NCBI GenBank assembly: GCA_048772705.1 | Contig: JBLWGC010000033.1 | Coordinates: 124,001 to 188,000, forward strand | Origin: Leidyana gryllorum EB-2025a | Lineage: Eukaryota > Protista > Apicomplexa | Direction of reading: 5' to 3' | DNA length: 64,000 bases | Part shown: one piece after another, positions 2,079-50,837 of the stretch | Layout: every line of letters starts with the position of its first letter | How positions within the stretch are numbered: position 1 is the first letter of the stretch | The notes under the pieces: model-generated | Database searches by the model: none | Seen by the model: only the letters and a program-made list of their open reading frames with translations | What the model was told of the DNA's origin: nothing | Made by a program: the position numbers and the translations under genes

Positions 2079-2206
2079 TAAACCGCGAGATCCTCACGTT
2101 TCTGTACACAATTACGCACAATCACACACCATCAGTTATCCCTCATCTCTTAACCACCTCTCTGCTTCACCACAGACCATCGCTCCGCCGTTTGATCAGC
2201 GGCCTC

Positions 2207-2605
2207 ATCTTTGTTAGACAAAACGCTGCCCACACTTCAATGCAAAAACACCTCAAATTTTTCAGCGACTGTGCTTCAAGGGATCTGTTCTTCAGTCCAC
2301 CGCACTGTCTCAGCAGAAATACTCTGCAACCAACTCAAACCACGAGGATGACAGCGTCTTGGCTTCCCATGCGACTTATTGGAGGAGCTTCTCGAAGTCA
2401 AGACTGCTGAGTGGTGACAGACTCGCGATGGTAAGTGACCCCCTAACTCCGGGAAGGATTGAAGGACAGCTTTCGCCCTCCCATCTGGTCAGAGAGCCCT
2501 CTCGCCCTAACCATTAATGCAAAGAGCTCCTCGTAACCCGTCTCCCCCGCTAACTATCCAGCGAGATTGAGCCGTCTCCCCCCATCTATCAATTCACAGG
2601 GCTCC
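2207..2605 (+). repeat. Left arm of ~400-bp inverted repeat
   Basis: ATCTTTGTTAGACAAAACGCTGCC...CAATTCACAGGGCTCC is the reverse complement of 6971-7368, with about 5 differences by eye. Confidence 0.95.
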
Positions 2606-6970: not shown

Positions 6971-7368
6971 GGAGCCCTGCGAATTGATAGATGGGGGGAA
7001 CGGCTCAATCTCGCTGGATAGTTAGGGGGGGAGACGGGTTACGAGGAGCTCTTTGCATTAATGGTTAGGGCGAGAGGGCTCTCTGACCAGATGGGAGGGC
7101 GAAAGCTGTCCTTCAATCCTTACCGGAGTTAGGGGGTCACTTACCATCGCGAGTCTGTCACCACTCAGCAGTCTTGACTTCGAGAAGCTCCTCCAATAAG
7201 TCGCATGGGAAGCCAAGACGCTGTCATCCTCGTGGTTTGAGTTGGTTGCAGAGTATTTCTGCTGAGACAGTGCGGTGGACTGAAGAACAGATCCCTTGAA
7301 GCACAGTCGCTAAAAAATTTGAGGTGTTTTTGCATTGAAGTGTGGGCAGCGTTTTGTCTAACAAAGAT
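6971..7368 (-). repeat. Right arm of ~400-bp inverted repeat
   Basis: GGAGCCCTGCGAATTG...GGCAGCGTTTTGTCTAACAAAGAT; reverse complement of 2207-2605. Confidence 0.95.
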
Positions 7369-34621: not shown

Positions 34622-35563
34622 TCAGTCAGTAGTACATTGTGGGCTACACTGTGGTGGTCTGTCTATGGCTCCAGAAGCCTCCTCGAATGTGTCGATCCAT
34701 TTTTGAGTAACGTCGGCCAGGTATCTCTTCGCTGCGACAAAACGTTTGCTGTCCATCAGTTGCCCCATCAATATGTCGTGGAACTTGGCATCTTCCAAAT
34801 CCTCAGTTGAGTAAGTCAGTCGATCGTCCACCTTTGCATCCCAGATCGGGATGGAGCGTCGGAAAGTCGTCGACAATTCTCGAACAGATCGTGTGAGTTT
34901 CACTGTCGACTGAGTGTGAGTGACCGGGGAGCAATCTTTCTTTTCCCTCTCCCCAGCATCGTCACTCCGTGTCTCCTTTGGTACGAGTTCGAAACACCAT
35001 CGAGAGTGCCAGGGCTGGGTGTGCACCCAATCGGGTCGCATAGGATCAAATTGGACCGGCCATGACGTTGTACCCTCCAAGCACTTCACGTGTACATAAA
35101 GTTTCCCTGTCCTGCTACCGATCCCTGTCGCAATCGACGGATGCGGCTGTCGAACGTCAAACCACCGTCCAACTCTTTCCTCGATGCAGTGTTCACGGTA
35201 CTCTTGCACTACCCGATTCCCCTCAGGTCCGTCGATCGCTAACCTTCGGCAGCGGTGACGCGCTTCGAAGTCTTCGCAGTCGCAATCCACCATAATCGAT
35301 CTTCCCGGCACCCCATTCACGTCATTAACGATCTCGCGTTTCGACTCCCAATTATATTGGATCGCCTGGCCGCCAGGTGCACCCGGCTTATCCCAGGTCG
35401 CGGTCGATGGACTCGGCACGCCCAAACAGTGAACTTTGTTATACCGGACATCGATATTGTGCTGACCAAATACTATGCCCCTCAGCAGTAGGCGCGATTC
35501 CCCCTTCTCTTTCGAGTTGAGAAGTATTTTCCCACTGGAGAGAACGGCGCTGTTCACTATCAA
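34622..35563 (-). CDS. Hypothetical protein, ~310 aa
   Basis: 313-codon ORF with non-ATG track start; no family recognised. Confidence 0.55.
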   Translation of the reverse strand: MIVNSAVLSSGKILLNSKEKGESRLLLRGIVFGQHNIDVRYNKVHCLGVPSPSTATWDKPGAPGGQAIQYNWESKREIVNDVNGVPGRSIMVDCDCEDFEARHRCRRLAIDGPEGNRVVQEYREHCIEERVGRWFDVRQPHPSIATGIGSRTGKLYVHVKCLEGTTSWPVQFDPMRPDWVHTQPWHSRWCFELVPKETRSDDAGEREKKDCSPVTHTQSTVKLTRSVRELSTTFRRSIPIWDAKVDDRLTYSTEDLEDAKFHDILMGQLMDSKRFVAAKRYLADVTQKWIDTFEEASGAIDRPPQCSPQCTTD

Positions 35564-35886
35564 ATATCAAGTGCGTTACTTTGAGTTTGACCGGGAGAAC
35601 GGAGCAGCATTCGACCAGTGTGCTGATTGGAAGTGGGCAATTTGGTGGAAGAAGCGCACACTCATTCGATTCTTGCGATCTGTCTTAACACGCTTTCACG
35701 ACTGACTGCAAGTACGTCGTGTACGCGTCCAGCGGTCGTTCACTCTCCTGGACGATAGGGGCTTGAGGAGCAAGTTGGATGTCTTCTCGTGTGCACATCT
35801 CGGTCACCTTCTGATCTAGCAGCGGTACTGGGTTGGGGCTATCATTCGCACTAAGAGGTGGTCTGGTTCAACTGATCTGCGTTGAC

Positions 35887-36161
35887 TGTAGCGGTACACC
35901 GAGTCAAGTCTAGCCCTACCTTACGCGTGATCTGTTTTTAGTTGCATGAATAGTCCTAGTTTACACGTGATTCGTTTTTGGTTGCATGAACACACGGGTG
36001 TCTCCGCACGGAGACACCGAAAATACAGACACGTGAACTTACCGATCTAGAAATGAACACCAGACGCACTAGGCGATCAAGTATTCTCCCTCGAGCCATG
36101 ACCCACCGCTCCAAAACCAAGACAACAGAGAGGGTAGATGACCCAGAGATGGAAACTTACA
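35887..36161. mobile_element. Solo LTR (275 bp), TGTA...TACA, 5-bp TSD TTGAC
   Basis: TTGAC at 35882-35886 and 36162-36166; the flanks join into a sequence found uninterrupted (inverted) at ~42340-42390. Confidence 0.85.
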
Positions 36162-36736
36162 TTGACGGTTGGTTGGTGCATCGGGTTGTTGTTTAAATTC
36201 GTGGTTGCTCAGTAATTGTCAATCCAAAAACATGTGTGTGAAAACGTGTCTCGGCTTTGGCGGGCTCCGGGATCCATTATTGCGCCTTGTCGCTCTAGCG
36301 GGTGGTGGTGTCGGCTACCCGTCACATCCTTACACAACTAATCGGAAATTTTGGGGACCCCTCTGCAGCTGTGGGCTTCTCCAAGATTTTCCCCATTTAC
36401 AGCTGTATACTTTGCGGATGGGAGTGTGCGTCGACTTCCGAAGACATTTGGAGTGTAACACTGCCGCAATTCCGCAGTGTTAGAAAGCACTAATTGCTAT
36501 GGCGAGGACACGAACGCAAAATCCTATGGGAAAGATTCAGGGAAGGGCCCTGGGCTCTTCCCCAAGCGGCAGCAGCCGCACCCACCACGTCGGGTGTGGA
36601 CCGGGTGGGGTGAACACAGCTGGTCCCGGTGAGCGCGCTTTGCGATGCGGAATGCGAATGACGGTGGCATTGAGCACATAAGTTCACCGCTGATACCACT
36701 GATCGTTGCAATGGCGAATTTGAAGCTCCATTCTAA

Positions 36737-38739
36737 GACTCATATTGAGGAATAAGGTTTGCGGGTAAGTTCAAAGATTTCAAGCATTGTAAAATGGCAT
36801 AAGGTTACTCCAGCTGCTGCTCCTCCCTTGCGCTGGAAAATGTCGTTTCCGACTATTGTAGTGCTGAGGCTATAGCACGCTCCCGCATAAAAGGTGCGAA
36901 GTCTTTGCAGTGGAGGCACGTTGAGGATTGTTGTGACTCCAGTCTTCTCTGTGTCGAGGCGACGCTACAGTACATCTCAGGCCCGCATCCGTAATTGATC
37001 TCATTGAAAACTGATTTGTTCTTTGGAGTCGTAATGGGATGTTGGAGTGATGAGTTTCCGAGGCGGAGGGCCTACGACACATTCGGTCAGGCTGCCGACG
37101 CAGCGATGACGGACCCATTCATCAACAAGATGGAGGAATGAGCCCGCCTGTTGGCATTTAGGTCCCTGTGGGGGTACAGTGGCCAGCACTGGGACTCTGC
37201 GATTGGAACACAAGTCAACGGACGTGCGAGTGTTGCAAAGGGGGAGACTATTCGCTCAGGGAGACTTGAACCTCCGATGCAAAGGGATACTCTGCAGAGG
37301 TCTCCCCGGCCGGCAGCGAAGGCCGCGGACGGCTTCCGATTGCTCCCACAGCACCTTCGCTACCACGTGTGCATCCAACAAATCTGTCTGTGCTATGAAA
37401 GACAGTCGTCACCGATCCAAGAGGAAAACGGTATGACCAAAAAGCCCATAAACCCCGGTGATCTGGTCGGACCTGTAAGTGTTAACGGGAGGGTTCAGCT
37501 ACACATATCCAAACTCCTGGGAGTGCCTGATACCCACCCCACTCTTTCCTCCTCCGTCCCCTCCAGGATGAATATTGGCCCCATTGATGGATCATTGACG
37601 CTCTAAAATCACGAGAGAACGATCTAAAGCTGCCTTTGGCGAATCAAAAGAGAGGGGAATGGCGATACGGAGGATGTATTCCGATCGTTGATAGAGCTGC
37701 TGGTCCCCGGCTGGATTGCTCGACAGGTGTTTTCGGCTGCAATGGTACTCTTACCAATGTCCTCAAGGCCACCTCGCAGAGGAATTGGACGAAACTAACG
37801 CTACAGCAGCCTTTGGCCGAAGGCAAATCACTGTGGGAGAAACTGTCCAGCCCTGCTAATGTCATCGGGCAGTCTCACACAGTGAAACACCGTCGACCCC
37901 GTCCTCATGCCCGACGCGGTTGGCACAACGTGGTAGATGAGGCTCGGAACCGTTTGTCCCACACCCCATTTGCAGACTCAACAGAGTGTCTGTCTCAGGA
38001 CTGCTCTCAGAGTCGTCTGTTGCTCAACTGAACACAACACTCCACGGAGCGTTTATTGCGCAAATCACCAACGGAGAAGCTTCAGCTGCTCTCGGTGGGT
38101 GGTTTCGTATGCGCACTGTGGACACCGACATCCACCTCTGTATCTCTCGACTCGAAGAGACACAACGGCCGCGGATTGACTAAAATAAAGGCTGTCATTA
38201 CAAAAACTAAATCGGAAATTTTGGGGACCGCTCAGTGCTGCCGAGTGCCTTCCCCGAATTTCCCGCCACATCGAAGTTTCTGGATTACTCCACGTTGTGG
38301 GATGAAGAGCCGTGAGGAAGCAACCACGAAAAGAGAAGATTCTAAGTGATTGAAGTTCGCGGAAGGGAATCACGCAATGCTAAACAGCAAAAAGGAGAAT
38401 CTCTAGCTGAGATGGGCATCAGACCCATCGGGTTTTGTTGTACGCTGACGCAACCAAGCGTGCGTCAGCCGAGTGTGCCAAGAAGAACCCATCTTCTTGG
38501 GGCCATCGACCGATGATGGGTGGGGCGAGCAGGTGAAGCCCTCTCGCGTAGATGAAAGCGCCTCCCAGTGCGTTTGGGAGGGAGTCGGAGCCTCCAAACA
38601 GTGGACCCACCACCAGTTCGGAACCGGTGGTTGGTACCACAGCAGAGGCGATGTCGCTTTCTTTTTTGGTATGATCAGAACTGTTGTCATCTCGATTGGT
38701 GACAAAGAACCGACTTCAATTTCTCCTTCATATGAGGAA
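36737..38739 (+). repeat. Left arm of ~2-kb palindrome
   Basis: Near-identical reverse complement of 39153-41141; matching ORF translations on opposite strands (e.g. 37151-37606 vs 40133-40588). Confidence 0.95.
36790..38739 (+). pseudogene. Frameshifted paralogue of the FHA-like gene
   Basis: VLQRGRLFAQGDLNLRCK, GRVQLHISKLLG, GCIPIVD and KHRRPRPHARR occur in different frames and match the 42534-44213 protein in order. Confidence 0.85.
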
Positions 38740-39152
38740 AACCTCCTACGAGGAAAACATACATACACGTGGGGTGGGAAGCAAACCACCTGGTCAATTA
38801 GTGTTGACAGAGTTAACTGATGCCTTTGCACCTCATGCCCCAAAAGACTTCAGAGTAACTACTTAATGAACTGTGCACCTAAGAAGGCAGTCTTAGGTCT
38901 CATCGGGTTGTTGACTAAGGGGATTATTACAGTGATAGTGCCGGTCGTAAGCAGCGTGTAGCATTAGGATTAGCTATGTTCACCGGGTCTACTTAGCTCT
39001 AGTCTCTGACCTAAAAGGAGTTACTTCCTAACGCATGTTCCTCATATACATCTAATCTTTAACACCTTTTTATACGTTAGACTATCTCACTCAACAATAC
39101 GTTAGACTATGTCTCTCAACAACCAAATGATCTACTAAACAAGTAAACAGTG

Positions 39153-41090
39153 TTCCTCATATGAAGGAGAAATTGAAGTCGGTTCTTTGTCACCAATCGA
39201 GATGACGTACATTCGAATGCATCAAAAAAAGAAAGCGACATCGCCTCTGCTGTGGTACCAACCACCGGTTCCGAACTGATGGTGGGTCCACTGTTTGGAG
39301 GCTCCGACTCCCTCCCAACCCCACTGGGAGGCGCTTTCATCTACGCGAGAGGGCTTCACCTGCTCGCCCCACCCATCATCGGTCGATGGCCCCAAGAAGA
39401 TGGGTTCTTCTTGGCACACTCGGCTGACGCACGCTTGGTTGCGTCAGCGTACAACAAAACCCGATGGGTCTGATGCCCATCTCAGCTAGAGATTCTCCTT
39501 TTTGCTGTTTAGCATTGCGTGATTCCCTTCCGCGAACTTCAATCACTCAGAATCTTCTCTTTTCGTGGTTGCTTCCTCACGGCTCTTCATCCCACAACGT
39601 GGAGTAATCCAGAAACTTCGATGTGGTGGGAAATTCGGGGAAGGCACTCGGTAGCAGCTGAAGCTTCTCCGTTGGTGATTTGCGCAATAAACGCTCCGTG
39701 GACGTGTTGAGTTGAGTAACAGACGACTCTGAGAGCAGTCCTGAGACAGACACTCTGTTGAGTCTGCAAATGGGGTGTGGGACAAACGGTTCCGAGCCTC
39801 ATGTACCACGTTGTGCCAACCGCGTCGGGCATGAGGACGGGGTCGACGGTGTTTCACTGTGTGAGACTGCCCGATGACATTAGCAGGGCTGGACAGTTTC
39901 TCCCACAGTGATTTGCCTTCGGCCAAAGGCTGCTGTAGCGTTAGTTTCGTCCAATTCCTCTGCGAGGTGGCCTTGAGGACATTGGTAAGAGTACCATTGC
40001 AGCCGAAAACACCTGTCGAGCAATCCAGCCGGGGACCAGCAGCTCTATCAACGATCGGAATACATCCTCCGTATCGCCATTCCCCTCTCTTTTGATTCGC
40101 CAAAGGCAGCTTTAGATCGTTCTCTCGTGATTTTAGAGCGTCAATGATCCATCAATGGGGCCAATATTCATCCTGGAGGGGACGGAGGAGGAAAGAGTGG
40201 GGTGGGTATCAGGCAGCCCCAGGAGTTTGGATATGTGTAGCTGAACCCTCCCGTTAACACTTACAGGTCCGACCAGATCACCGGGGTTTATGGGCTTTTT
40301 GGTCATACCGTTTTCCTCTTGGATCGGTGACGACTGTCTTTCATAGCACAGACAGATTTGTTCGATGCACACGTGGTAGCGAAGGTGCTGTGGGAGCAAT
40401 CGGAAGCCGTCCGCGGCCTTCGCTGCCGGCCGGGGAGACCTCTGCAGAGTATCCCTTTGCATCGGAGGTTCAAGTCTCCCTGAGCGAATAGTCTCCCCCT
40501 TTGCAACACTCGCACGTCCGTTGACTTGTGTTCCAATCGCAGAGTCCCAGTGCTGGCCACTGTACCCCCACAGGGACCTAAATGCCAACAGGCGGGCTCA
40601 TTCCTCCATCTTGTTGATGAATGGGTCCGTCATCGCTGCGTCGGCAGCCTGACCGAATGTGTCGTAGGCCCTCCGACTCGGAAACTCATCACTCCAACAT
40701 CCCATTACGACTCCAAAGAACAAATCAGTTTTCAATGAGATCAATTACGGATGCGGGCCTGAGATGTACTGTAGCGTCGCCTCGACACAGAGAAGACTGG
40801 AGTCACAACAATCCTCAACGTGCCTCCACTGCAAAGACTTCGCACCTTTTATGCGGGAGCGTGCCATACCCTCAGCACCACAATAGTCGGAAACGACATT
40901 TTCCAGCGCAAGGGAGGGGCAGCAGCTGGAGTGACCTTATGCCATTTTACTATCAACCCAAGAGGAGTACGTTCGCATAGGTCGGTCAGTCACATATTAG
41001 ACGTGAAAATATTGCGGGGCACTGACGAGACCGTGAATGCGATCGAAAGAATACCGCTCTTGCCTTCGCGCCGGCACACACACACTTTCA
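39153..41090 (-). pseudogene. Second (inverted) copy of the frameshifted FHA-like paralogue
   Basis: Same fragments in ORFs 40303-40560, 40133-40588 and 39543-40103. Confidence 0.85.
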
Positions 41091-41141
41091 CAATGCTTGA
41101 AATCTTTGAACTTACCCGCAAACCTTATTCCTCAATATGAG
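39153..41141 (-). repeat. Right arm of ~2-kb palindrome
   Basis: Reverse complement of 36737-38739; 413-bp spacer at 38740-39152. Confidence 0.95.
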
Positions 41142-41386
41142 CCTCAGATTTACAATCGCAATGATCAGTGGTATCAGCAGTGGAGTTAAGTACGCAATGC
41201 CACCTGTCGTTCGCATTCCGCATCGCAAAGCGCGTTCTCCGGGACCAGCGGTCTTCACTCCACCCGGTCCACACCCGACCTGGTGGGTGTGGCTGCTGCC
41301 CTTTAGGAAAGAGCCCAAGGCCATTCCCTGGATCTTCCCGACAGGAGACCGCTCTTTGCCCAATGCGGTGAAGAGATAGGAACCCA

Positions 41387-42178
41387 TGTGTCAACTTCCA
41401 TCAAGTTGTCGTCAAGTTCGACTACCGGGCCAACCCACATAAGAGCCATTCTACAACCCAACGAGGGATTACTTTCGGAGTTAGTTACACCACAGACGTA
41501 ATGATCACGAGCGAAAAACAATTTCAATGTTTGCATCAGATCTCTTCATATTCGACTCTTTGAATGGCGATCAATTGGAGTCGCCATGGAGCGAACGCGC
41601 TTGCGCGATACTTGACGTCTTGGGGTGTTTCCGCAAACGGTTTTCCTCAACATGAGCCTCAGAATGGAGCAGAATAGAGCTTCAGATTCAAATCGCTACG
41701 ATTAGTGGTATTAACCCCCAAGTTAAATACGCAATGCCACCTGTCGTTCGCATTCCGCATCGCAAAGCGCGTTCTCCGGGACTAGCGGTCTTCACTCCAC
41801 CCGGTCCAGACCCGACCTGGTGGGTGTGGCTGCTGCCCTTTAGGGAAGAGCCCAAGGCCATTCCCTGGATCTTCCCGACAGGAGACCGCTCTTTGCCCAA
41901 TGCGGTGAAGAGATAGGAACCCTCTTGTTCCTACAAGAGGCCCATTGCCTCTTTTTCCTGCATCGCGTGGTGACCCACTTTTTGTGTTCGTGTCCTCGCC
42001 AATAACAATTAGTGATTCCTAGCACTGTGGCAATTCCACAGTGTTACACTCCAAATGTCATCGTAAGTCGACGCACACTCCCGTCCACAGAGTAAACAGC
42101 TCTGAATGGGGGGAAATCCTGGAGAAGCCCACAGCTGCACTGAGGGGCCCCAAAATTTCCGAATTAGTTTTGTAACGA
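41387..42178. repeat. ~790-bp direct repeat, copy 1
   Basis: TGTGTCAAC...TTTTGTAACGA, highly similar to 44530-45320 apart from a ~75-bp central patch. Confidence 0.92.
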
Positions 42179-42533
42179 GGTGACCAGTAGCTGACACCAC
42201 CAGAAGCCAGAGCGACAACGCAGCACAGGCGGAATAGTGCACCGCGGCGCTCAGCCAAGCCGAGGGATCGACGCTTACTGTTTTACACACACGCTTTTGG
42301 ATCGACACTTTCCGAACAACCACAAACTAAAACAACATTGCGATGCACCAACCGACCGGCAGCGCAGATCAGTTGAACCAGACCACCAGAAGCCAACCGC
42401 CGTCCTCACACATATTTGACCCAGCCAGATAGGACAATAACTTACAAATCAGTAGCAAGTGGCACTCGGGTAAGAACTGACAGTTGCCATCCAGTGTATC
42501 ACTTCGAGTTGAAAGTCTGTGGTGAGAAACGCT

Positions 42534-44213
42534 TCATTGGGAATCAGCTGCAGCCGCCAATTTCTTCCGGGTATGTGGTCGAGGGCGGCGATGTTTCGTC
42601 TGGTATTCCGATACTATATCCCACGTCATCTTGGTCTTGATATAGTGCTCTTCCTCTTTCAAAACTCGTTGTACCGCCGCCCGGTTGCTGGCAGTGTTCA
42701 AGTGGCCTTTGATTATGTCCTTGAAGGTACCGGTATACGCCATGGGCTCAATGGAATGCACAATATCAGGGGTGTGCGGGTCTATAATTGGTACGCACCC
42801 CTCACACCGTGTTGTTCTGGTGAGTGTGGTCTTGTAGAGCATCACCACCAAGACCGTCACAGTCTCTTTGTCCCGCTGTTGGGGTGCCGGAAGTCTCCAG
42901 CGGTGTCGCCAGAAAGTCTCGTAGGGGGGCGAGGCGGACGGGGTGAATGTCATCAGCCAGTTGGTGAGGCCGAGGAGCTCGGAGATGTGGAGGCGAACTC
43001 GGCCTTTGCCACTGGCCGCTCCTATGGGGAGAACGGAGAGAGGTACTCGCGTGTCCTCCCATTTCCCAATCCGCTCCGAAGTGACTTCAAGTTCGTAATC
43101 TAGTGTTCCTTGCTCCCACGGCTCCAGTCGCGCTCCAATAGTGGTGTGGCGTGAGTCCGACGCTGGACAATCACATGGGAGTTCTTCCACAACGGAGGCA
43201 GGCCGGCCGTGCACTAGAACTCGGTTGGTGACTGTTTGATTCCAACACGAGTACCCAGTAACCTCATATGGGGAACGGTCGTGCTTCAATAGAGCCTTCT
43301 GAGGTGCATGCTCGGCGTCAGGAAGACCGAGGCAGTAGAGACTCTTACAGCTAATCTCCAAATCTCCCTCCGCGAACATCACCCCCCTCTGTAGTAGTCG
43401 CAGCTCGGGGCCCCTGCCCTCTACAACCAGTTTGCCGGATGTCGCTATCATCCCCTTGATGTTCACCAGATCATTCTTCACCCGCAGTTTTATCTGCGCG
43501 TTGACCCCCACGGCGAGAATCGATGGTCGACCGGTAGTCGCATGAGTGGCACCAGATGATTTGGTCCAATAATCGACTCCGTTGACGAGGACCTGTGCAA
43601 CGATTGTCAATCGATTGCCAATCACGCTGCCATTATCTTTGTTGTTGAATCGACCGCGTACTTCAATCACCGCCGAATCCGCATACACTCTCGTGTCGTT
43701 TACAAAACTGTTCGTCACGATGCCAAGACTTCCTTGCACTTCGAGCTCCTTTGTCAGACTTAGCCGTGTTACTTCGAGTTTGAGATTGCCTTTAACGACG
43801 ACATGTGATGTAATTTCGAGAGCATCGGTTTTCAAAGTCAGATCGTTTTCGATCACAGTGTCGACGTCGAACAATACGCTCTTCACCTCAATAACAAGCG
43901 GGTACACTTTCGTGTATCCCGCCAGCTCGCTCAGTCTCACGCAAAGATGGCGGGCATCAACTTTCGCGGCTTGCAAACCGAGCAAGTCGTCGGGGTTGGT
44001 CTCAGCGGCCGAGTCCAACTCCTGTTCCCGGATCCTCATCTTCTCCGCGAGCGTCCGGTTCGCTCTTGGGGCTCGGGTGCGAGAACCCAAGAGAGGCTCC
44101 GCCACCACTGTCACATCCTTCGCAGACTGCTCGTCTCCATCCTGGAGTGCGCATTCGCTCGTTTCAAGGTCACACACAGACTCAGCTGGGCTATAAAAAA
44201 GCTCCATGGTCAT
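42534..44213 (-). CDS. Filamentous-haemagglutinin-like beta-helix repeat protein, probably truncated
   Basis: Intronless ORF (first ATG 44213) with ~19-aa periodic repeats: VIENDLTLKTDALEITSHV / VVKGNLKLEVTRLSLTKEL / EVQGSLGIVTNSFVNDTRV / YADSAVIEVRGRFNNKDNGSV / IGNRLTIVAQVLVNG, then DLVNIKGMIATSGKLVV and MFAEGDLEI. Confidence 0.65.
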   Translation of the reverse strand: MTMELFYSPAESVCDLETSECALQDGDEQSAKDVTVVAEPLLGSRTRAPRANRTLAEKMRIREQELDSAAETNPDDLLGLQAAKVDARHLCVRLSELAGYTKVYPLVIEVKSVLFDVDTVIENDLTLKTDALEITSHVVVKGNLKLEVTRLSLTKELEVQGSLGIVTNSFVNDTRVYADSAVIEVRGRFNNKDNGSVIGNRLTIVAQVLVNGVDYWTKSSGATHATTGRPSILAVGVNAQIKLRVKNDLVNIKGMIATSGKLVVEGRGPELRLLQRGVMFAEGDLEISCKSLYCLGLPDAEHAPQKALLKHDRSPYEVTGYSCWNQTVTNRVLVHGRPASVVEELPCDCPASDSRHTTIGARLEPWEQGTLDYELEVTSERIGKWEDTRVPLSVLPIGAASGKGRVRLHISELLGLTNWLMTFTPSASPPYETFWRHRWRLPAPQQRDKETVTVLVVMLYKTTLTRTTRCEGCVPIIDPHTPDIVHSIEPMAYTGTFKDIIKGHLNTASNRAAVQRVLKEEEHYIKTKMTWDIVSEYQTKHRRPRPHTRKKLAAAADSQ

Positions 44214-44433
44214 AAAACCTCCGGTTCCGCTTGTAGGCAGCGTGACTGACGATGAGTACCGCAATTCGCACAGACGTTAAAAAAGTCAGGCGCGCCTCTG
44301 ACTCTTTTGGAACCCAGCACAGCCCTTTCCAAAGTCCACCGCCCATCTGGCAGCATGACGAGCGGCCGCTAGGCTGAGTGTGTTACCCTTTTTAATATAC
44401 TCTAAAGAATAACGAACACTTGCACCCTTAGTT

Positions 44434-44518
44434 CCGGTTTCTCATAGTCCTTTCCTCTAGTAGTCCATCTAACGACCGGTTTCTCATAGTCCTTTCCTCT
44501 AGTAGTCCATCTAACGAC
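44434..44518. repeat. ~42-bp tandem duplication
   Basis: ccggtttctcatagtcctttcctctagtagtccatctaacga twice. Confidence 0.9.
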
Positions 44519-44529
44519 CAGACATCAAG

Positions 44530-45320
44530 TGTGTCAACTTTCATCAAGTTGTCGTCAATTTCGACTACCGGGCCAACCCACATAAGAGCCATTCTACAAC
44601 CCAACGAGGGATTACTTTCGGAGTTAGTTACACCACAGACGTAATGATCACGAGCGAAAAACAATCTCAATGTTTGCATCAGATCTCTTCATATTCGACT
44701 CTTTGAATGGCGATCAATTGGAGTCGCCATGGAGCGAACGCGCTTGCGCGATACTTGACGTCTTGATGTTTTCCGCAAACGGTTTTCCTCAACATGAGCC
44801 TTGAAATGGGGAGGTAATATTTGTCAAAGTTTGATTAAGTGACTGATTCCAGTGTTTATCGCTACAATCAGAATCATGCCACCTGTCATTCGCATTCCGC
44901 ATCGCAAAGCGCGTTCTCCGGGACCAGCGGTCTTCACTCCACCCGGTCCACACCCGACCTGGTGGGTGTGGCTGCTGCCCCTTAGGGAAGAGCCCAAGGC
45001 CCTTCCCTGGATCTTCCCGACAGGAGACCGCTCTTTGCCCAATGCGGTGAAGAGATAGGAACCCTCTTGTTCCTACAAGAGGCCCATTGCCTCTTATTCC
45101 TGCGAAAAGTGGTGACCCACTTTTCGTGTTCGTGTCCTCGCCAATAACAATTAGTGATTCCTAGCACTGTGGCAATTCCACAGTGTTACACTCCAAATGT
45201 CATCGTAAGTCGACGCACACTCCCATCCACAGAGTAAACAGCTGTGAATGGGGGAAAATCCTGGAGAAGCCCACAGCTGCACTGAGGGGCCCCAAAATTT
45301 CCGAATTGGTTTTGTAACGA
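44530..45320. repeat. ~790-bp direct repeat, copy 2
   Basis: Matches 41387-42178. Confidence 0.92.
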
Positions 45321-45329
45321 CGTCGCGGG

Positions 45330-45950
45330 TATATGATTTGTGAACCGTTACTGTCCTGTCTGGTTGGGTCGAGCAGAGGTGAATGCGTCGGTTGGTTTTC
45401 AGTGATCGAATCCTTTTGGTGCGGCGGAATGGTAGCTGGCATCATCTAACTGTAGTTTTTTGGTAGTCAATGTTCAATCACTCAATCAGTTAAAAACGCG
45501 TGTGTGTAAACGTGTGTCTCCCCGGACGGGTATGGCCGGGCACAAGGTGCTTTACTACGACTAAACTGCTTAATTCGGTGTCCATGAGCTATTTATTGGG
45601 TCCTTAAGACGTCGCTCCTACTGCTGGTAGTGTCAATCAGAAATAGACACAACATCATTTTTTGGATCAGTATAACCCCCGTTTGAACGAACAACGTCAC
45701 CATTTGGCCACAGTGATGGGGGGGGGGTTCAGATGTTGAGACTTTGCGCAGATTTTGTTCTGCACATAGCTGTGAACAAGAGTAGTGCCAAGCGATTATT
45801 GATTTGAGGGTCGCAGGTCGTAATCCAGACAGCCCTGTGGGTCCAGTGAGTATCTCAGGGACACGGGAGTTCACTTTGAAGCAGCTCAGCAATTCGAGTG
45901 AAACGCAACTCTCTGTATCCTGCCTGACCGGGCTGGGACAGGGCCAGCCC
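45330..45950 (+). pseudogene. Older plus-strand relics of the FHA-like gene family
   Basis: 45333-45400 resembles the reverse complement of 42385-42450; NPDSPVGPVSISGTREFTLKQL resembles NPGDLVGPVSVNGRVQLHISKL. Confidence 0.55.
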
Positions 45951-46061: not shown

Positions 46062-48422
46062 TTATGGAGTGATTTGAGCGTGTAGACTTTGGAGTGGACG
46101 GTCGGAGGCCAACGAAATGAAAAAGGTCATGTTGGTTGGATGGACGATAAGATTTAGATTATTATCCCACGAGGCTAATTCACTTATTGGATTGACAGAA
46201 AAGGTAATCCTTTGTGGTTGGTCTGATTGTAGTGTTACCCGTTTATATCCAACGAGCTGGAGGAGTGATGGTGTGATTCTGGCCGTCCGGTTGCCAACAT
46301 AGAGTTGGAGTATTTCAGTGTACTCGATGGCTCTCTCTTTTGACGGGTCGCCCCAGGCATCGTCCGTGATGACGTCAAACTCAATCCTAAAGTCTGTAGG
46401 ATGCGCAAAAGTCATGACCGTTGGTGTCACAGTCGCATTTTCCACTTTGACGGAGTGGTATCCTTCCCCACTTCCGAAGGCATACAGAGGCGTTGGAAGT
46501 CTGTCGATATAGATACTGTGAAACGCTCTGTCTCCATCCCACATTGTGGTGATCTCTTTCCCTTCCGCCGGTCTCGAAACTCCGGGATGATTGTAGTAGA
46601 GGGGTTCCTGACCGACATGACGGGGGAAGCTCATGGGTACTCTACCGCCTGGCTCCGCGTGGCCCATCAGGACGCTTGCAGCCGCCTTTGAGGCACCGTG
46701 ACCGAGAGGCAACCATTGCCAAAGGATGGCGTCCATGTGATAGTGCTCCCATTCTATCGCGAGCGGTCTCTCCCCATATGTGAACAATATCGCTGCAGGA
46801 CGCTCTCGTTGATCCTTCTTTTCAATGGCGGCTGCCACAGCCCGCAGCAGTACCCGATGGTTATGGGGCAGAGTAAGCTGAAGGTTCCGTCGTCCCTTCC
46901 GATATGTCTCACTGTCCCCGACCACAGTAAGAATCTTCGTGAAATTCCCGTGGGTGATCAATTGTGCAGCCTCGGCAGCCAGTGCCACGGTCTTGGAGCT
47001 GTCGACACTGTATCCCGCAGCATAGCTTACGTCCAAACCGGTCTGCCGCAGAGCCTCCGACAGACTGGTCAGGGATTCAGGGCTTCTGCACTGCGTAGGC
47101 GCGTTTGTCGCTACCGCTGTCAAATGGCTTTCGGCTATCTCTCCGAGCAGCAGTACTCTGTCATCTTGTGAGAAGGGCAAAGCTCTCTCGGCATTCTTCA
47201 AGAGCAACAGCGACCGAACGGCCGCTGTCTCGGCCAACTCCAAACTCTCGGGAGAACACATCGACTCCATCGAACGACTCTCGGTGTATTTGGCCCTCAG
47301 CATCTGCTCCTTCGCTATCATCACTCTCTGAGAGCTGACTGTGATGTAGTCCTCCACCGTGTGCGCGCTCTCGGGTGCCGAGTGTTTTCGAAGCGCCTGC
47401 AGCGTGCTGTCATAGATACTGTCTGCCATGTCGACCCCGGCCCGTAGGAGCGCTGCTGTGTACTTCTCAACGTCCTCAAAGTGGCCCGTGTGAATGGCGT
47501 GCGGTCTGTCCTGGTTCAATGCCATGACAATGCCCTTGTAGCCAAACAGCCCGCGCAATGTATCAGTCACATATTCTGGACTCGTCAAAAAGGGTCGACC
47601 GTTCAGTGTATTGTCCTTCGCCAAAATGCACAGAGGCCGCTCGCTTCTCAGCACTCTGGCCAGCGAAGCAAAGTACCCACCAAACAGAACACCTGTCCCA
47701 GAATCGTGTCCCTCGGTCAATGCCCCAGTTACCGAGGTACAAGTCGCCCCGAACTGGTTCAAACATAGTCCAACTCGATCATCAGCTTCCATAATAGCTT
47801 CTGCCATCGTTCCAATGAGATGCTGATCCTCTCCCCCACTCTCAGGAGCGGAAACGAGGCGAGCGTCCAGACTCAATTGCACATTCGGGAAGAAGTGGTA
47901 ATTGAACCCGGCCGCCAAGAGGTCATTGTGCTTCGCTCGGGTGATTGACTGCACTAACGGCCGATCAAACGTTGACACTAACCCTAGGGGAGGGGGGAAA
48001 TGTGTGCCTATTTGAACCTTGGGACCAGGAGCCAACATCAACTTTGGGCTATGTTGCTTCATGCGTGCTGCCATTGCTGCGTATAATGGGGCCATCAGAG
48101 TCTCATTATAGGCCAACCGTTCATCTTCTATTATTACGTTGCTGATCAGCTCCTCTCTGAGGTCCCGTTGGAACCTTTGCGACACACTTGCCCCGCTGTG
48201 TATCCGACGAGTCACGAGTTGACCTATACGTTGTTTCAAAGTCAATGATTCATACTGAGCCCGGACTGCCGTTGGGACATCGCTGCTGTCAAACGGCAGA
48301 TGGGCAACTGGATCATAAGATGGAATGAGGTCGGGAGAGCGAAGTGATTGGCCTTTGACAGTAACAGTCAGGTGCCACGCCAAGAGGGCCGTTGTGAGGC
48401 ACCGTTTGCTGAGTCTGAACAT
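46062..48422 (-). CDS. GH3 (BglX-like) glycosidase homologue, predicted secreted, catalytic motifs lost
   Basis: LTLKQRIGQL, FPPPLGLVSTFDR, ESGGED, SLLLLKN, PGGRVPMSFPRHVGQEPLYYNH, PLYAFGSGEGY and a FnIII-like end; signal-like N-terminus MFRLSKRCLTTALLAWHLTVTVKG; KH and SDW motifs absent. Confidence 0.88.
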   Translation of the reverse strand: MFRLSKRCLTTALLAWHLTVTVKGQSLRSPDLIPSYDPVAHLPFDSSDVPTAVRAQYESLTLKQRIGQLVTRRIHSGASVSQRFQRDLREELISNVIIEDERLAYNETLMAPLYAAMAARMKQHSPKLMLAPGPKVQIGTHFPPPLGLVSTFDRPLVQSITRAKHNDLLAAGFNYHFFPNVQLSLDARLVSAPESGGEDQHLIGTMAEAIMEADDRVGLCLNQFGATCTSVTGALTEGHDSGTGVLFGGYFASLARVLRSERPLCILAKDNTLNGRPFLTSPEYVTDTLRGLFGYKGIVMALNQDRPHAIHTGHFEDVEKYTAALLRAGVDMADSIYDSTLQALRKHSAPESAHTVEDYITVSSQRVMIAKEQMLRAKYTESRSMESMCSPESLELAETAAVRSLLLLKNAERALPFSQDDRVLLLGEIAESHLTAVATNAPTQCRSPESLTSLSEALRQTGLDVSYAAGYSVDSSKTVALAAEAAQLITHGNFTKILTVVGDSETYRKGRRNLQLTLPHNHRVLLRAVAAAIEKKDQRERPAAILFTYGERPLAIEWEHYHMDAILWQWLPLGHGASKAAASVLMGHAEPGGRVPMSFPRHVGQEPLYYNHPGVSRPAEGKEITTMWDGDRAFHSIYIDRLPTPLYAFGSGEGYHSVKVENATVTPTVMTFAHPTDFRIEFDVITDDAWGDPSKERAIEYTEILQLYVGNRTARITPSLLQLVGYKRVTLQSDQPQRITFSVNPISELASWDNNLNLIVHPTNMTFFISLASDRPLQSLHAQITP

Positions 48423-48488
48423 TGCCGCCCCTGTTTGCATATTTGAATCCCAGAGTTCTGGAACGTGTGCAGACACGCGCGTCAGGGA

Positions 48489-50837
48489 ATGTCGTTGATT
48501 CCCTCGTTATTCGGTTTCTCCAGTCATGTTCCCGACTTTGCTTCTTGGGCATCACTACCAATCGATCTACGGCGAACAATATCGAATTTGAATGACGACC
48601 AAATGATAGGGCAAACATCTCAACTTTCAGCCGAGATGTTTGCTTGGAGTCATTTGAATCCGCAGGAGCTTGAGTTGTTAGTGGCGAACGGAAGTATCGG
48701 CAGTATGCTTCATGTGTACAAATATGACGATGTGGATAAGTACCAGCGTATGGCTTTGAATGGGTCCAATACTATCCCGGTCTTGTTCGGATTCGACACT
48801 GTACGAGGTTACGCTACGGCGTTCCCGCAGAACATCGGTCTGGCCGCTGCGTTTGACCGGGATCTGATATACGATGTTTCGCACGCAATGGCCGAGGAGA
48901 CCCTCAAGTCGAACATTCGATGGCTATTTGCTCCGAACTCTGACATTGGTCGAGATGCCCGATGGGGTCGTATGGCTGAGACGAGTGGAGAAGATCCTTA
49001 TTTGACGTCTGAATTGGTCAAAGCGTATGTGACTGGGATTCAATCGACGGGGGCTGCGGCGTGTGTCAAACATTTGGCAGCGTATGGCGGAGCGGAAGCC
49101 GGTCGGGACTACAACCCCACCTATATGAGCGAGCAGCTGTTCTTTACCGACCACACCAAGGCATACAGAGCGGGTTTGGTGGAGGGGGGAGCCTGGACGG
49201 CTATGACGTCTTACAATGCGTTTAATGGAGTCCCGGCGACGATCAATGGTCAGATACTCAATAAACTGGTCCGAGGTGTTTGGGATTGGCACGGTATGGT
49301 GGTGAGTGATTGGGCAGCTGTACACGACTTGATTCATCACGGGGTGGCGATTGACGATGTGGATGCGGTATATCTGAGCGAGTTTGTGGGTGTGGACATG
49401 TCGATGGGCGATGCGGATTACTGGCGATGGCTGAAGGATCAATTGTATCGAACATTGCCCAACGGTGATTTAGTTCGTCAAAATGTCGAGAAATCTGTGC
49501 AACGGATAATCGATCTGAAGACCAAACTCGGTCTGTTTGAGAATCCCTTCATTGATCGACCTGACGTTGAGAAGGATTTCTGTAGCGAGCCCAAGTTAAA
49601 ATTGGCCCTGGATGCTGCCCTCAAGTCCATGGTGCTACTGCAGAATAATGGGGACAACACGCTACCGCTTAAGCGGGAGGCCAACTTGTTGATACTCGGA
49701 GCCCTGGCGGCGAACGTGGAAGACTCTATTGGATCCTGGCCCGACGCCGACGTCTGTCGTGGCAAAGTGAAGACTATCAAAGACGCTTTTGAGGACACTG
49801 ACTATTTGCCTGGCTACACTTCCCCCTGGCGTGAAGACGAACACGGAGACAGCGAGCTGCGGCAGGAAGTTGTCACTAAAATCAAAGGGGCCGAGAAACC
49901 GTATGACGCCATCGTTGTGGTTGTGGGTGAAGCGGAAGCCCAGAATGGAGAGACCACCAGTCGCACCGATCTCAACCTGAACCCACCTCAGGCCAAGTTG
50001 ATCCGAGAAGTATTTTTGGCTATCCATAGCGGAGGAGAGTCGGAGTCGGCAGCGATACCCAAAATAATACTCGTAGTCATCAGTGGCAGACCTCTAACAT
50101 TGAGTTGGGAGGCTGAGAATCTCGATGCCATATTGATGGCCTGGGCAGCTGGTCATGCGATTGGTCCGGCTGTCAAGGCCCTGTTGTTTGGAGACGTGTC
50201 TCCGAGCGGGAGAATGCCCGTGACGACTCCCCGAGACGTCTCGCAATGCCCTCTCCACTATGCCACCGCCATTGAGGATGACGGGTCAGCTCCTGCATGT
50301 TTCGATTACAACGAGGTGTACTGGGGCATCAAGATGCCAGGCGAAGAAGACTGCTATCTTGGCAAAGCGGGAGCGCCCCTGTGGCCCTTCGGACACGGCT
50401 TGAGTTATCAGGCGTTCCGTTACAGCGATCTCCAAGTGTCGCCCAGGATTGTCGATGGCGGGACTCTGTTGGACGATGAGGACAACAGTGTGGACACTGG
50501 CAAGGTGACGGTGGAGGTAACAGTCAGCCGGGGTGGGACGACCGAGGGTCCGACGTTCGACGGCCCAGTGGACCATATCGTTCAAGTGTACGCAGAGGGG
50601 CCCGTGTCCCCGGAGAGTACTTCGTATGCGAGGCGTAAACGGCTCATTGATTTCAAGAGAGTGCACTTTGACCAGGGCGAGGTGGAAAAGACAGTCTCGT
50701 TCGAAATTGACGTGTTAGAATCGTTGGGTAGTTATGACCACCGGTTAGAATGGGTGTTACTGAAGGGAAGCCATAAGATTATCATTGGAAAGGACAGCGA
50801 AGACGAATCACAAGTAGAATCAATAAAGATTCTGTAG
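48489..50837 (+). CDS. GH3 beta-glucosidase (BglX-like)
   Basis: FGFDTVRG, FPQNIGLAAAFD, RDARWGRMAETSGEDP, ACVKHLAAYG, MTSYN, GMVVSDW (nucleophile), NGETTSRTDL, PLWPFGHGLSY; intronless. Confidence 0.95.
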   Translation: MSLIPSLFGFSSHVPDFASWASLPIDLRRTISNLNDDQMIGQTSQLSAEMFAWSHLNPQELELLVANGSIGSMLHVYKYDDVDKYQRMALNGSNTIPVLFGFDTVRGYATAFPQNIGLAAAFDRDLIYDVSHAMAEETLKSNIRWLFAPNSDIGRDARWGRMAETSGEDPYLTSELVKAYVTGIQSTGAAACVKHLAAYGGAEAGRDYNPTYMSEQLFFTDHTKAYRAGLVEGGAWTAMTSYNAFNGVPATINGQILNKLVRGVWDWHGMVVSDWAAVHDLIHHGVAIDDVDAVYLSEFVGVDMSMGDADYWRWLKDQLYRTLPNGDLVRQNVEKSVQRIIDLKTKLGLFENPFIDRPDVEKDFCSEPKLKLALDAALKSMVLLQNNGDNTLPLKREANLLILGALAANVEDSIGSWPDADVCRGKVKTIKDAFEDTDYLPGYTSPWREDEHGDSELRQEVVTKIKGAEKPYDAIVVVVGEAEAQNGETTSRTDLNLNPPQAKLIREVFLAIHSGGESESAAIPKIILVVISGRPLTLSWEAENLDAILMAWAAGHAIGPAVKALLFGDVSPSGRMPVTTPRDVSQCPLHYATAIEDDGSAPACFDYNEVYWGIKMPGEEDCYLGKAGAPLWPFGHGLSYQAFRYSDLQVSPRIVDGGTLLDDEDNSVDTGKVTVEVTVSRGGTTEGPTFDGPVDHIVQVYAEGPVSPESTSYARRKRLIDFKRVHFDQGEVEKTVSFEIDVLESLGSYDHRLEWVLLKGSHKIIIGKDSEDESQVESIKIL

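What the first reader, a model, noticed from the sequence alone, without database searches (positions are those of the whole stretch)
35850..45950. 10-kb locus built from rearranged copies of one FHA-like gene: one long open copy among silent cassettes
Seen: the palindrome arms, the 790-bp direct repeats and the flanking relics are collinear pieces of the same gene. The order is beta-helix repeats, LQRG..FA.GDL, GRV.LHIS.LLG, KHRRPRPH, GGW, KT(N/K)SEILG, G.S...H.HQ.G.G, hydrophobic stretch, then GAGGAAAAC. This order holds in the left arm (36790-38739) and from 44213 down through ~41640. The 3' part recurs at about 36170-36760, 38200-38739, 39153-39650, 41110-41385, 41640-42360 and 44780-45320 at several levels of divergence. 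Established: bacterial CdiA/Rhs loci keep orphan 3' cassettes, and several parasites vary surface antigens by gene conversion from pseudogene donors. Inference: this may be a eukaryotic cassette-shuffling adhesin/toxin locus. The simpler alternative is a decaying amplified gene family.
Basis: partly seen in the sequence, partly recalled or inferred. Interest (0 to 1): 0.85.

Follow-up and report, generated by a model that had tools for sequence, protein, structure and literature searches.

The report
Decaying duplicated FHA-like gene cluster
This 10-kb stretch of a small parasite genome holds one intact gene for a protein with a bacterial-adhesin-like shaft, surrounded by broken copies and repeated non-coding tail DNA, and it looks like ordinary gene duplication and decay, not a system for swapping gene cassettes.

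Summary
The repeats are real. There is a 4.2-kb palindrome with arms 98.6% alike, 795-bp direct repeats (92%) on both sides of a 576-codon ORF, and older relics.

'FHA-like' holds. A profile of the family hits giant bacterial TpsA/FHA proteins, one paralogue passes Pfam Fil_haemagg, and the modelled beta-helix best matches the HMW1, EtpA, HxuA and FHA secretion domains (Z 16-20).

The recurring '3' part' is not coding:
- It starts 147-352 bp after the stop codon.
- Every frame has 5-15 stops, and 8 of 11 indels between copies break the frame.
- 'KT(N/K)SEILG' is an invariant 15-nt DNA word, followed by different frames in different copies.
- Paralogues end where the ORF ends.
- Part of the module also lies behind an unrelated transporter gene 130 kb away.

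The palindrome arms carry a frameshifted copy with no detectable beta-helix and no DNA-level likeness to the ORF body. No signal peptide, membrane segment, TPS domain or toxin domain was found.

Verdict: birth-and-death of a gene-plus-flank unit, with repeat recombination and mobile-element insertions. A cassette system is not supported. Expression and assembly could not be tested because no runs were listed.

First readers of this scan flagged FHA-like genes elsewhere in this genome.

The parts
34622..35563 (-). Paralogue A. A 313-codon open frame that covers only the C-terminal (LLLRG...) half of the family. It has no ATG at its 5' end and stop codons just upstream, so it is probably a 5'-truncated copy.
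   Evidence: The family profile matches positions 193-435. The translation shows upstream stops and the first Met about 90 codons in. It is 24% identical to the 576-codon ORF.
35857..36794 (+). Module copy C. An inverted copy of the non-coding 3' flank of the ORF, 78% identical to 42387-41631, split by an LTR-like insertion.
   Evidence: blastn, alignment. 8 of 11 indels against copy R are not multiples of 3, and each frame has 5-9 stops.
35885..36162 (.). A 278-bp TG...CA dispersed repeat, probably a solo LTR, with a 5-bp target duplication TTGAC. The empty site is at 42360/42361 in copy R.
   Evidence: 97% identical copies lie on contigs C200, C210 and C103.
36786..38742 (+). Left palindrome arm. 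It holds a degenerate paralogue in three reading frames (LQRG 37170-37337, GRVQLHIS 37454-37543, KHRRPRPH 37864-37917), then its own diverged version of the 3' flank module (38195-38742).
   Evidence: Its best relative is the ORF, at 43-47% identity in patches.
38743..39149 (.). Palindrome spacer. It contains two short dispersed repeats, 38802-38911 and 38973-39097.
   Evidence: Copies at 82-93% identity lie on C140, C85, C202, C169, C43, C51 and C230.
39150..40953 (-). Right palindrome arm. It carries the same frameshifted copy, differs from the left arm by about 25 substitutions, and lacks 149 bp and 4 bp that the left arm has.
41086..41385 (-). Module copy D. A partial tandem repeat of the distal module with period 537 bp. 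It is mosaic: the 5' part is about 98% like copies R and B, and the 3' part is like copy C.
   Evidence: Informative sites are listed.
41387..42533 (-). Module copy R. The non-coding 3' flank directly downstream of the ORF's stop codon. It contains the invariant word TCGGAAATTTTGGGG at 42148-42162 and the motif CTCATGTTGAGGAAAA.
   Evidence: 12-14 stops in every frame. Similarity to the other copies is equal in all frames.
42534..44264 (-). The only long open copy, 576 codons, with the first ATG at 44213 (559 aa). It has N-terminal helices, an FHA/TpsA-type beta-helix at aa 120-311, and an orphan C-terminal domain from LLQRG to KHRRPRPH.
   Evidence: ORF. AlphaFold2 beta-helix pLDDT 80-93. Structural matches to TpsA proteins at Z 16-20. 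Profile hits to TpsA proteins. dN/dS 0.39-0.72 against dead fragments.
44381..44477 (.). A 97-bp dispersed repeat in the upstream region of the ORF.
   Evidence: 98% identical copies on C123 (two), and 80-90% copies on C173, C43 and C35.
44530..45323 (-). Module copy B. A direct repeat of 41387-42181 at 92%, lying upstream of the ORF. No family coding sequence is detectable upstream of it.

Best explanation
The locus is a birth-and-death cluster of a small, lineage-specific gene family in a compact eukaryotic genome. Earlier notes of this scan call the organism gregarine-like.

The family protein has a bacterial TpsA/FHA-type beta-helix followed by an orphan C-terminal domain. The unit that was copied is the gene plus about 1.1 kb of non-coding 3' flank. 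Tandem and inverted duplication of this unit, followed by deletion, frameshifts, mobile-element insertions and exchange between the flank repeats, produced the present layout:
- one intact, probably functional gene (42534-44264, minus strand);
- a 5'-truncated open relic (34622-35563);
- a young palindrome of two dead copies;
- five to six copies of the non-coding flank module.

Shown: the repeats, the non-coding nature of the modules, the broken state of the arm copies, the mosaic copy D, the inserted repeats and the FHA-type fold.

Inferred: the order of events, that the open gene is expressed and functional, and that it acts inside the cell rather than on the surface.
For: - **Repeat map:**
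- **Local origin:** the local copies are each other's closest relatives. The ORF matches the arm copy at 43-47% in patches and paralogue A at 24%.
- **Broken arms:** the arms match only profile positions 195-252, and their three homologous segments lie in three different frames.
- **Non-coding modules:**
  - Similarity between copies is equal in all three frames.
  - 8 of 11 indels (R against C) and 3 of 3 (R against B) are not multiples of three, with 5-15 stops per frame.
  - The two 104-codon ORFs in copies R and C are not homologous in frame.
  - After the invariant 15-mer, the frame that gives 'SEILG' differs between copies.
- **The ORF is not cut short:** seven family members end within a few tens of residues of the ORF's end, and the ORF has the longest tail.
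- **Module found without the gene:** the distal module also lies downstream of an unrelated MFS transporter at C33:29.5 kb.
- **A real coding motif for contrast:** KHRRPRPH differs between ORF and arm at six synonymous and no non-synonymous sites.
- **Recombination between modules:** copy D is a mosaic of R/B-type and C-type sequence.
- **Inserted repeats:**
- **Selection on the ORF:** dN/dS is 0.39-0.52 in the beta-helix and 0.63-0.72 in the C-terminal part, measured against frameshifted fragments on other contigs.
- **Precedent:** family members C133a and C133b are tail-to-tail and each other's best hit at 28%. This looks like an older inverted duplication of the same geometry.
Against: - No RNA or DNA sequencing run could be listed, so neither expression of the ORF nor the assembly of the palindrome is verified.
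- Paralogue A stays open for 313 codons despite old divergence. That is odd for a dead relic; it may be a real short gene or have an upstream exon I did not find.
- The 15-nt word TCGGAAATTTTGGGG is identical in four module copies that are otherwise 78% alike or unalignable. It sits in a possible stem-loop. This hints that the flank has a function that simple decay does not explain.
- Raw codon-position counts of ORF against the C139/C26 fragments are nearly flat at 22/19/22%, so purifying selection on the C-terminal part is weak.
Confidence: 0.7

Rival explanations
1. One expressed FHA-like adhesin or toxin gene is varied by gene conversion or recombination from silent 3' cassettes kept in the locus, as in CdiA/Rhs orphan cassettes or pseudogene-driven antigenic variation.
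For: - One long open copy sits among partial copies.
- Recombination between repeat copies does occur: copy D is a mosaic.
- Fragments at 77-87% nucleotide identity exist on other contigs.
- The C-terminal part evolves fast, with dN/dS 0.63-0.72.
Against: - The repeats start 147-352 bp after the stop codon and are non-coding.
- All module copies are the same sequence family, not alternative variants.
- The arm copies have no blastn-level similarity to the ORF body, so there is no substrate for homologous exchange inside the coding region.
- The C-terminal domain is conserved across the family and matches no toxin family.
- No signal peptide or membrane segment was found, and no TPS domain.
- The family has only about 6-7 genes.
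Confidence: 0.04
2. The 3' module is itself a functional or mobile non-coding element, such as an RNA gene, a 3'-end or regulatory element, or a recombination-prone repeat. It spreads or is kept by selection and drives the rearrangements. The gene copies are passengers.
For: - The invariant 15-mer is present only in these four copies in the 15.5-Mb genome.
- A possible stem-loop of 16 pairs has two pairs with compensatory change.
- The distal module occurs on its own behind an unrelated gene 130 kb away.
- There is a partial tandem repeat with a 537-bp period.
- The CTCAT(A/G)T(T)GAGGAA motif lies at or near several segment junctions.
Against: - No Rfam family matches.
- Only about seven copies exist, all on one contig.
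- Copy boundaries differ between copies, and I did not see terminal repeats or target duplications.
- The stem-loop rests on only four sequences.
Confidence: 0.15
3. The module is the decayed 3' coding end of a once longer gene, and the ORF's stop at 42534 is premature. This is the reading in which all pieces are collinear parts of 'the same gene'.
For: - The order gene body, KHRRPRPH, 15-mer island, distal module is the same in the arm and in the ORF locus.
- The arm's frame stays open for 45 codons past KHRRPRPH.
Against: - All other family members stop at or before the ORF's end.
- Paralogue A is followed directly by another gene, with no module.
- Conservation in the module is at nucleotide level, with frame changes between copies.
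- The distal module occurs away from any family gene.
Confidence: 0.07
4. The palindrome and/or the direct repeats are assembly artefacts.
For: Palindromes with short spacers can arise from chimeric long reads. No reads could be laid on the region.
Against: - The arms differ by about 25 scattered substitutions and two indels, which a fold-back artefact would not give.
- The spacer holds dispersed repeats that also occur elsewhere.
- The flanks continue at lower identity (84-95%) beyond the arms.
Confidence: 0.04

Closest known systems
Bacterial TpsA exoproteins of two-partner secretion (FHA/FhaB, HMW1, EtpA, HxuA, CdiA)
   Same: Both have a right-handed beta-helix built of haemagglutinin-type repeats.
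- The family profile hits giant TpsA proteins of Vibrio, Marinomonas and others.
- One paralogue passes the Pfam Fil_haemagg cut-off (23.7 against 21.5 bits).
- The top structural matches are the HMW1, EtpA, HxuA and FHA secretion domains at Z 16-20, and a Fil_haemagg cluster in the ESM Atlas.
   Different: - The genes here are eukaryotic and short (430-580 aa, against 1,000-7,000).
- No TPS domain, signal peptide or neighbouring Omp85-type partner gene was found.
- The C-terminal 280 residues match nothing known.
- A single-segment profile comparison with the best hit is weak (hhalign probability 47%), so common descent is likely but not proven.
Polymorphic toxin loci with orphan 3' cassettes (CdiA-CT/CdiI, Rhs; Zhang et al. 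2012, PMC3482391)
   Same: A repeat-shaft gene is followed by repeated partial 3' pieces in the same neighbourhood.
   Different: In those loci the cassettes encode alternative toxin tips with paired immunity genes, and they recombine onto a constant 5' body (PMC3482391). Here the repeated pieces are one non-coding sequence family lying after the stop codon, with no conserved ORF.
Antigenic variation by segmental gene conversion from pseudogene archives (for example trypanosome VSG, Anaplasma msp2, Borrelia vlsE; from my own knowledge)
   Same: One intact copy plus broken copies, with some exchange between repeats.
   Different: - No coding-sequence homology tracts link the intact gene to the local copies.
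- The archive is tiny.
- No sign of surface display was found.
- The only mosaic seen is in non-coding DNA.
Palindromic and tandem segmental duplications with birth-and-death gene family evolution (general genome biology; from my own knowledge)
   Same: All of the following fit that pattern:
- local paralogues are closest to each other;
- intact and disabled copies are mixed;
- arm identity is much higher than flank identity;
- mobile elements have inserted;
- an older tail-to-tail pair of the same family lies elsewhere.
   Different: Nothing essential differs. The unusual point is the kind of gene involved.

Membership tests
TpsA / filamentous haemagglutinin family | Right-handed beta-helix of haemagglutinin-type repeats | tested here: met
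   - AlphaFold2 beta-helix at aa 120-311, pLDDT 80-93.
- Z 16-20 to HMW1, EtpA, HxuA and FHA.
- 397 profile hits, led by TpsA proteins.
- Pfam Fil_haemagg passes its cut-off in paralogue C7.
- The window ORF itself has no Pfam hit.
TpsA / filamentous haemagglutinin family | N-terminal TPS secretion domain (PF05860) | tested here: not met
   No PF05860 hit at E <= 10 in any of nine family sequences.
TpsA / filamentous haemagglutinin family | Signal peptide and a partner TpsB (Omp85-type) transporter gene | tested here: not met
   - A crude hydropathy scan finds no clear signal-like N-terminal stretch in the full-length members; the highest score is 1.36, in C133b.
- The neighbouring genes are GH3 hydrolases, a VATC-domain protein and a transporter-like protein.
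- A missed upstream exon cannot be excluded.
CdiA/Rhs-type polymorphic toxin locus with orphan cassettes | Cassettes encode alternative C-terminal toxin domains, usually with an immunity gene | tested here: not met
   - Modules have 5-15 stops in every frame and frame-breaking indels.
- Their two 104-codon ORFs are not homologous in frame.
- All copies are one sequence family.
CdiA/Rhs-type polymorphic toxin locus with orphan cassettes | A homology tract inside the 3' coding region of the main gene that lets cassettes replace the tip | tested here: not met
   Repeat homology begins at 42387 (copy C) or 42181 (copy B). That is 147 and 352 bp downstream of the stop codon at 42534-42536.
CdiA/Rhs-type polymorphic toxin locus with orphan cassettes | A recognisable toxin domain at the C-terminus | tested here: inconclusive
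   No Pfam hit, no homologues, and an unusable model at pLDDT 40. The domain is conserved across paralogues rather than variable.
Pseudogene-archive antigenic variation | Donor copies share nucleotide-level homology with the expressed gene's coding region | tested here: not met
   The locus holds none. Elsewhere there are only a few frameshifted fragments at 77-87% identity, lying in repeat-rich contigs.
Pseudogene-archive antigenic variation | The product is displayed on the cell surface (signal peptide, membrane or GPI anchor) | tested here: not met
   The hydropathy scan gave a maximum 19-residue Kyte-Doolittle score of 1.36 in the ORF, with no N-terminal hydrophobic stretch. This is a crude test.
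Pseudogene-archive antigenic variation | Only one copy is expressed, and it changes between isolates or over time | not testable with these tools
   No sequencing run was listed for this sequence.
Birth-and-death segmental duplication cluster | Local copies are closest relatives; intact and disabled copies are mixed; neutral decay and mobile-element insertions are present | tested here: met

The most novel reading that the evidence does not exclude
The 3' flank module is not junk. It carries a 15-nt word that is invariant in four copies and found nowhere else in the genome, inside a possible stem-loop. It could be a functional RNA or recombination element that travels with this subfamily of FHA-like genes and promotes their duplication, inversion and exchange. 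In the strongest form of this reading, the locus does generate variants of a gregarine FHA-like protein.
Probability: 0.08. Interest if true: 0.65.

Novelty: new variant of a known kind. Interest (0 to 1): 0.33.

Why it matters
The locus architecture is ordinary: a gene cluster that grew by tandem and inverted duplication and is now decaying.

The gene is the part worth keeping. It belongs to a small eukaryotic family that pairs a bacterial two-partner-secretion-type beta-helix with an orphan C-terminal domain, and it shows no secretion signals. I found no paper describing such proteins in apicomplexans.

If the family came from bacteria and was put to use inside the parasite cell, it would be a clear case of a bacterial adhesin scaffold reused by a eukaryote.

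The report also gives a practical caution. Peptide-like motifs read from repeated DNA can be nucleotide-level motifs in non-coding flanks.

Tried and rejected
- **Protein searches:** three word-based searches (whole ORF, family alignment, C-terminal alignment) returned nothing.
- **Sequencing runs:** The look-up of sequencing runs listed none. Read laying was therefore not used, and expression, small RNAs and assembly were not tested.
- **RNA genes:** Rfam and the tRNA scan found nothing in the locus.
- **Foldseek:** a search of the PDB with the whole model gave nothing at E <= 0.001. The exhaustive VIA-align search did find matches.
- **C-terminal domain:** folded alone, it gave pLDDT 40, which is unusable. 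The Atlas feature search scored only 0.76, below the level that means anything.
- **15-mer near-matches:** one-mismatch matches on C82 and C169 proved to be unrelated local repeats, with no family gene and no module homology.
- **MFS transporter gene beside the stray module copy:** it is unrelated to the family.
- **Bacterial promoter/terminator scan:** no more hits than in shuffled sequence, and not relevant to a eukaryote.
- **Codon-position counts:** the raw counts looked neutral. The degeneracy-corrected estimate shows dN/dS below 1, so I dropped the idea that the ORF is itself a young pseudogene.

Handling notes: I translated the frameshifted arm copies frame by frame and never joined or repaired them.

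Full report
**Setting.** The window is C33:124001-188000 of a 15.5-Mb, 237-contig genome. Neighbouring ORFs carry eukaryotic domains: WD40, Patched/sterol-sensing, DDAH_eukar, the VATC treble clef, GH3 hydrolases and NRPS-like reductases. Earlier notes of this scan call the organism a gregarine-like apicomplexan. I did not check that independently.

**Observation.** The repeats are real and far beyond chance.
- Palindrome arms 36786-38090 / 40953-39653 are 98.6% alike, and 38232-38742 / 39661-39150 are 97% alike, around a 407-bp spacer.
- The arms differ by about 25 scattered substitutions. The left arm also has 149-bp and 4-bp stretches that the right arm lacks. This argues against a fold-back assembly artefact.
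- A 795-bp direct repeat (41387-42181 and 44530-45323, 92%) lies on both sides of the only long ORF, 42534-44264 on the minus strand. That ORF has 576 codons, with the first ATG at 44213.
- Further copies of the same downstream sequence lie at 41086-41385. This is a partial tandem copy with a 537-bp period.
- Another copy, inverted, lies at 35857-36794.
- The inverted copy is split by a 278-bp TG...CA element with a TTGAC target duplication. The empty site is visible at 42360/42361, and 97% identical copies lie on three other contigs, so it is a solo LTR.

**What the gene is.** The ORF has no Pfam hit and no word-based homologues. It belongs to a small family in this genome of about six or seven divergent genes, 18-26% identical. 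Members are on contigs C7, C133 (two, tail to tail), C202 and C208, plus window 34622-35563. Fragments lie on several repeat-rich contigs.

A profile of nine family sequences was searched against 1.84 billion proteins.
- It gave 397 hits at E <= 0.001. The best are giant bacterial proteins with a TPS secretion domain and haemagglutinin repeats, named as two-partner secretion or filamentous haemagglutinin proteins of Vibrio, Marinomonas and others.
- These hits cover only profile positions of about 40-240, the beta-helix. Nothing matches the C-terminal half.
- Paralogue C7 passes Pfam's own cut-off for Fil_haemagg at 23.7 against 21.5 bits.

The AlphaFold2 model has a confident beta-helix at residues 120-311 (pLDDT 80-93) and is poor elsewhere.
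- An exhaustive structural search ranks the HMW1, EtpA, HxuA and FHA secretion domains first (Z 16-20, about 190-230 residues aligned), above generic beta-helices.
- The ESM Atlas shape search also puts a Fil_haemagg cluster first.

So 'FHA-like' is supported by profile and by fold. A single-segment profile comparison with the best hit is weak (47% probability), so common descent is likely but not proven.

The proteins fail the other defining features of TpsA proteins.
- No TPS domain was found.
- A hydropathy scan finds no clear signal-like N-terminal stretch and no membrane segment.
- No Omp85-type neighbour gene is present.

The C-terminal domain has the landmarks RLLQRG, YCLG, C.C, W.D, W..RW and F.DI..G. 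It is shared by all paralogues, has no relatives elsewhere, and could not be modelled (pLDDT 40).

**The '3' part' is not part of the gene.**
1. Repeat homology starts 147 bp (copy C) or 352 bp (copy B) after the ORF's stop codon.
2. The other family members stop at or before the point where the ORF stops, and the ORF has the longest tail. Paralogue A is followed directly by another gene, with no module.
3. Module copies are equally similar in all three frames. Each frame has 5-15 stops, and indels between copies are mostly not multiples of three: 8 of 11 for R against C, 3 of 3 for R against B.
4. The two 104-codon ORFs found in copies R and C are not homologous in frame.
5. 'KT(N/K)SEILG' is the translation of an invariant DNA word, TCGGAAATTTTGGGG. 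It is identical in four copies that are otherwise 78% alike or unalignable, and the reading frame after it differs between copies.
6. By contrast, the true coding motif KHRRPRPH differs between ORF and arm at six synonymous and no non-synonymous sites.
7. The distal half of the module also lies, at 71-72% identity, behind an unrelated MFS transporter gene at C33:29.5 kb with no family gene nearby.

**The other copies.**
- The palindrome arms hold a degenerate paralogue. Its three recognisable segments (LQRG, GRVQLHIS, KHRRPRPH) lie in three different frames.
- The family profile finds no beta-helix part in the arms.
- Both arms share these defects, so the copy was already broken when the arms were last made alike.
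- The arms have no blastn-level similarity to the ORF body. Only a 74-bp island in the flank matches.
- Paralogue A (34622-35563) is open for 313 codons but starts inside the family's domain structure, with stops upstream and no nearby ATG.
- Fragments of the ORF at 77-87% nucleotide identity exist on contigs C139, C26, C62, C71 and C215. They are frameshifted and sit in repeat-rich DNA.
- Against these fragments the ORF shows dN/dS of 0.39-0.52 in the beta-helix and 0.63-0.72 in the C-terminal part. Since the fragments evolve neutrally, this points to purifying selection on the ORF, stronger on the helix.

**History and mechanism.** Local copies are each other's nearest relatives, so the cluster grew in place.
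- The copied unit was the gene plus its 3' flank.
- The outer palindrome flanks (copies C and D) are only about 84% alike overall. Identity rises to 95% next to the arms and to 98.6% within them.
- Copy D is a mosaic. Its 5' part is about 98% like the same-strand copies R and B, and its 3' part is like its palindrome partner C. Exchange between flank repeats has therefore happened.
- The spacer and the ORF's upstream region contain short dispersed repeats.
- Elsewhere, the C133 pair is tail to tail and the two genes are each other's best hit at 28%. It looks like an old version of the same inverted duplication.

Together this is birth-and-death evolution by tandem and inverted duplication, repeat recombination, mobile-element insertion and decay.

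**Why not a cassette system.** Polymorphic toxin loci recombine alternative coding tips, with immunity genes, onto a constant 5' body (PMC3482391). Pseudogene-archive systems need coding homology tracts and a displayed product. Here:
- the repeated pieces are one non-coding family lying after the stop codon;
- the dead copies cannot pair with the ORF body;
- the C-terminal domain is shared across the family rather than swapped;
- nothing suggests surface display.

I put the cassette reading at about 4%.

**What remains odd.**
- The invariant 15-mer occurs only in these four copies in the whole genome. It sits in a possible 16-pair stem-loop with two compensatory pairs, on only four sequences.
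- The motif CTCAT(A/G)T(T)GAGGAA lies at or near several segment junctions.
- Paralogue A stays open although it looks truncated.

A functional or recombination-prone flank element is my second choice, at about 15%.

**Limits.** No sequencing run could be listed, so expression, small RNAs and assembly correctness were not tested, and read laying was not used. The signal-peptide test is a simple hydropathy scan. Gene models ignore possible introns.

**Verdict.** The locus is ordinary. The gene family, a eukaryotic TpsA-type beta-helix with an orphan tail and no secretion signals, is the part worth further work. First readers of this scan flagged it at other places in this genome as well.

Noticed in passing
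window 35885-36162: A 278-bp TG...CA element with a 5-bp TTGAC target duplication, inserted in module copy C. The matching empty site is at 42360/42361. Copies at 97% identity lie on C200, C210 and C103. This looks like a solo LTR.
   Followed up: yes
window 44381-44477: A 97-bp dispersed repeat (98% on C123 twice; 80-90% on C173, C43 and C35) sits about 117 bp upstream of the first ATG of the intact ORF. It could be a small mobile element in the promoter region.
   Followed up: partly
window 38802-38911 and 38973-39097: The palindrome spacer is made largely of two short dispersed repeats. One of them also lies just downstream of the family member on C202 (C202:287384-287502).
   Followed up: partly
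window 36342-36356, 38212-38226, 42148-42162, 45290-45304: The word TCGGAAATTTTGGGG is invariant in four module copies and has no other exact copy in the genome. It forms one side of a possible 50-nt stem-loop with two compensatory pairs. The right palindrome arm has lost it in a 149-bp deletion.
   Followed up: partly
window 42564-42617 and 37864-37917: The C-terminal motif KHRRPRPH is identical in the ORF and the arm copy, with six synonymous and no non-synonymous differences. It is a basic motif that was under strong past constraint, possibly a targeting or cleavage signal.
   Followed up: partly
G000 C133:24909-26051 (+) and C133:28055-29299 (-): Two intact family members (433 and 490 aa) lie tail to tail and are each other's best hit at 28%. 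This is the same geometry as the window palindrome but much older.
   Followed up: partly
G000 C62:7785-8012, C71:16519-16704 and 23111-23340, C215:18613-18786, C139:2966-3592, C26:32464-33043: Frameshifted fragments of the ORF at 77-87% nucleotide identity are embedded in repeat-rich contigs. One lies next to a gag-like ORF with a zinc knuckle (L014:1477-2574). C139 and C26 share the same deletions, so a dead fragment was itself copied.
   Followed up: partly
G000 C33:29399-30099 (L040:5400-6100): A stray copy of the distal 3' module (71-72% identity) lies downstream of an 857-codon MFS/sugar transporter ORF, about 130 kb from the locus on the same contig.
   Followed up: yes
window 46062-50837: Two GH3 beta-glucosidase-like genes lie head to head right next to the locus. 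The first has much weaker Pfam scores than the second.
   Followed up: no
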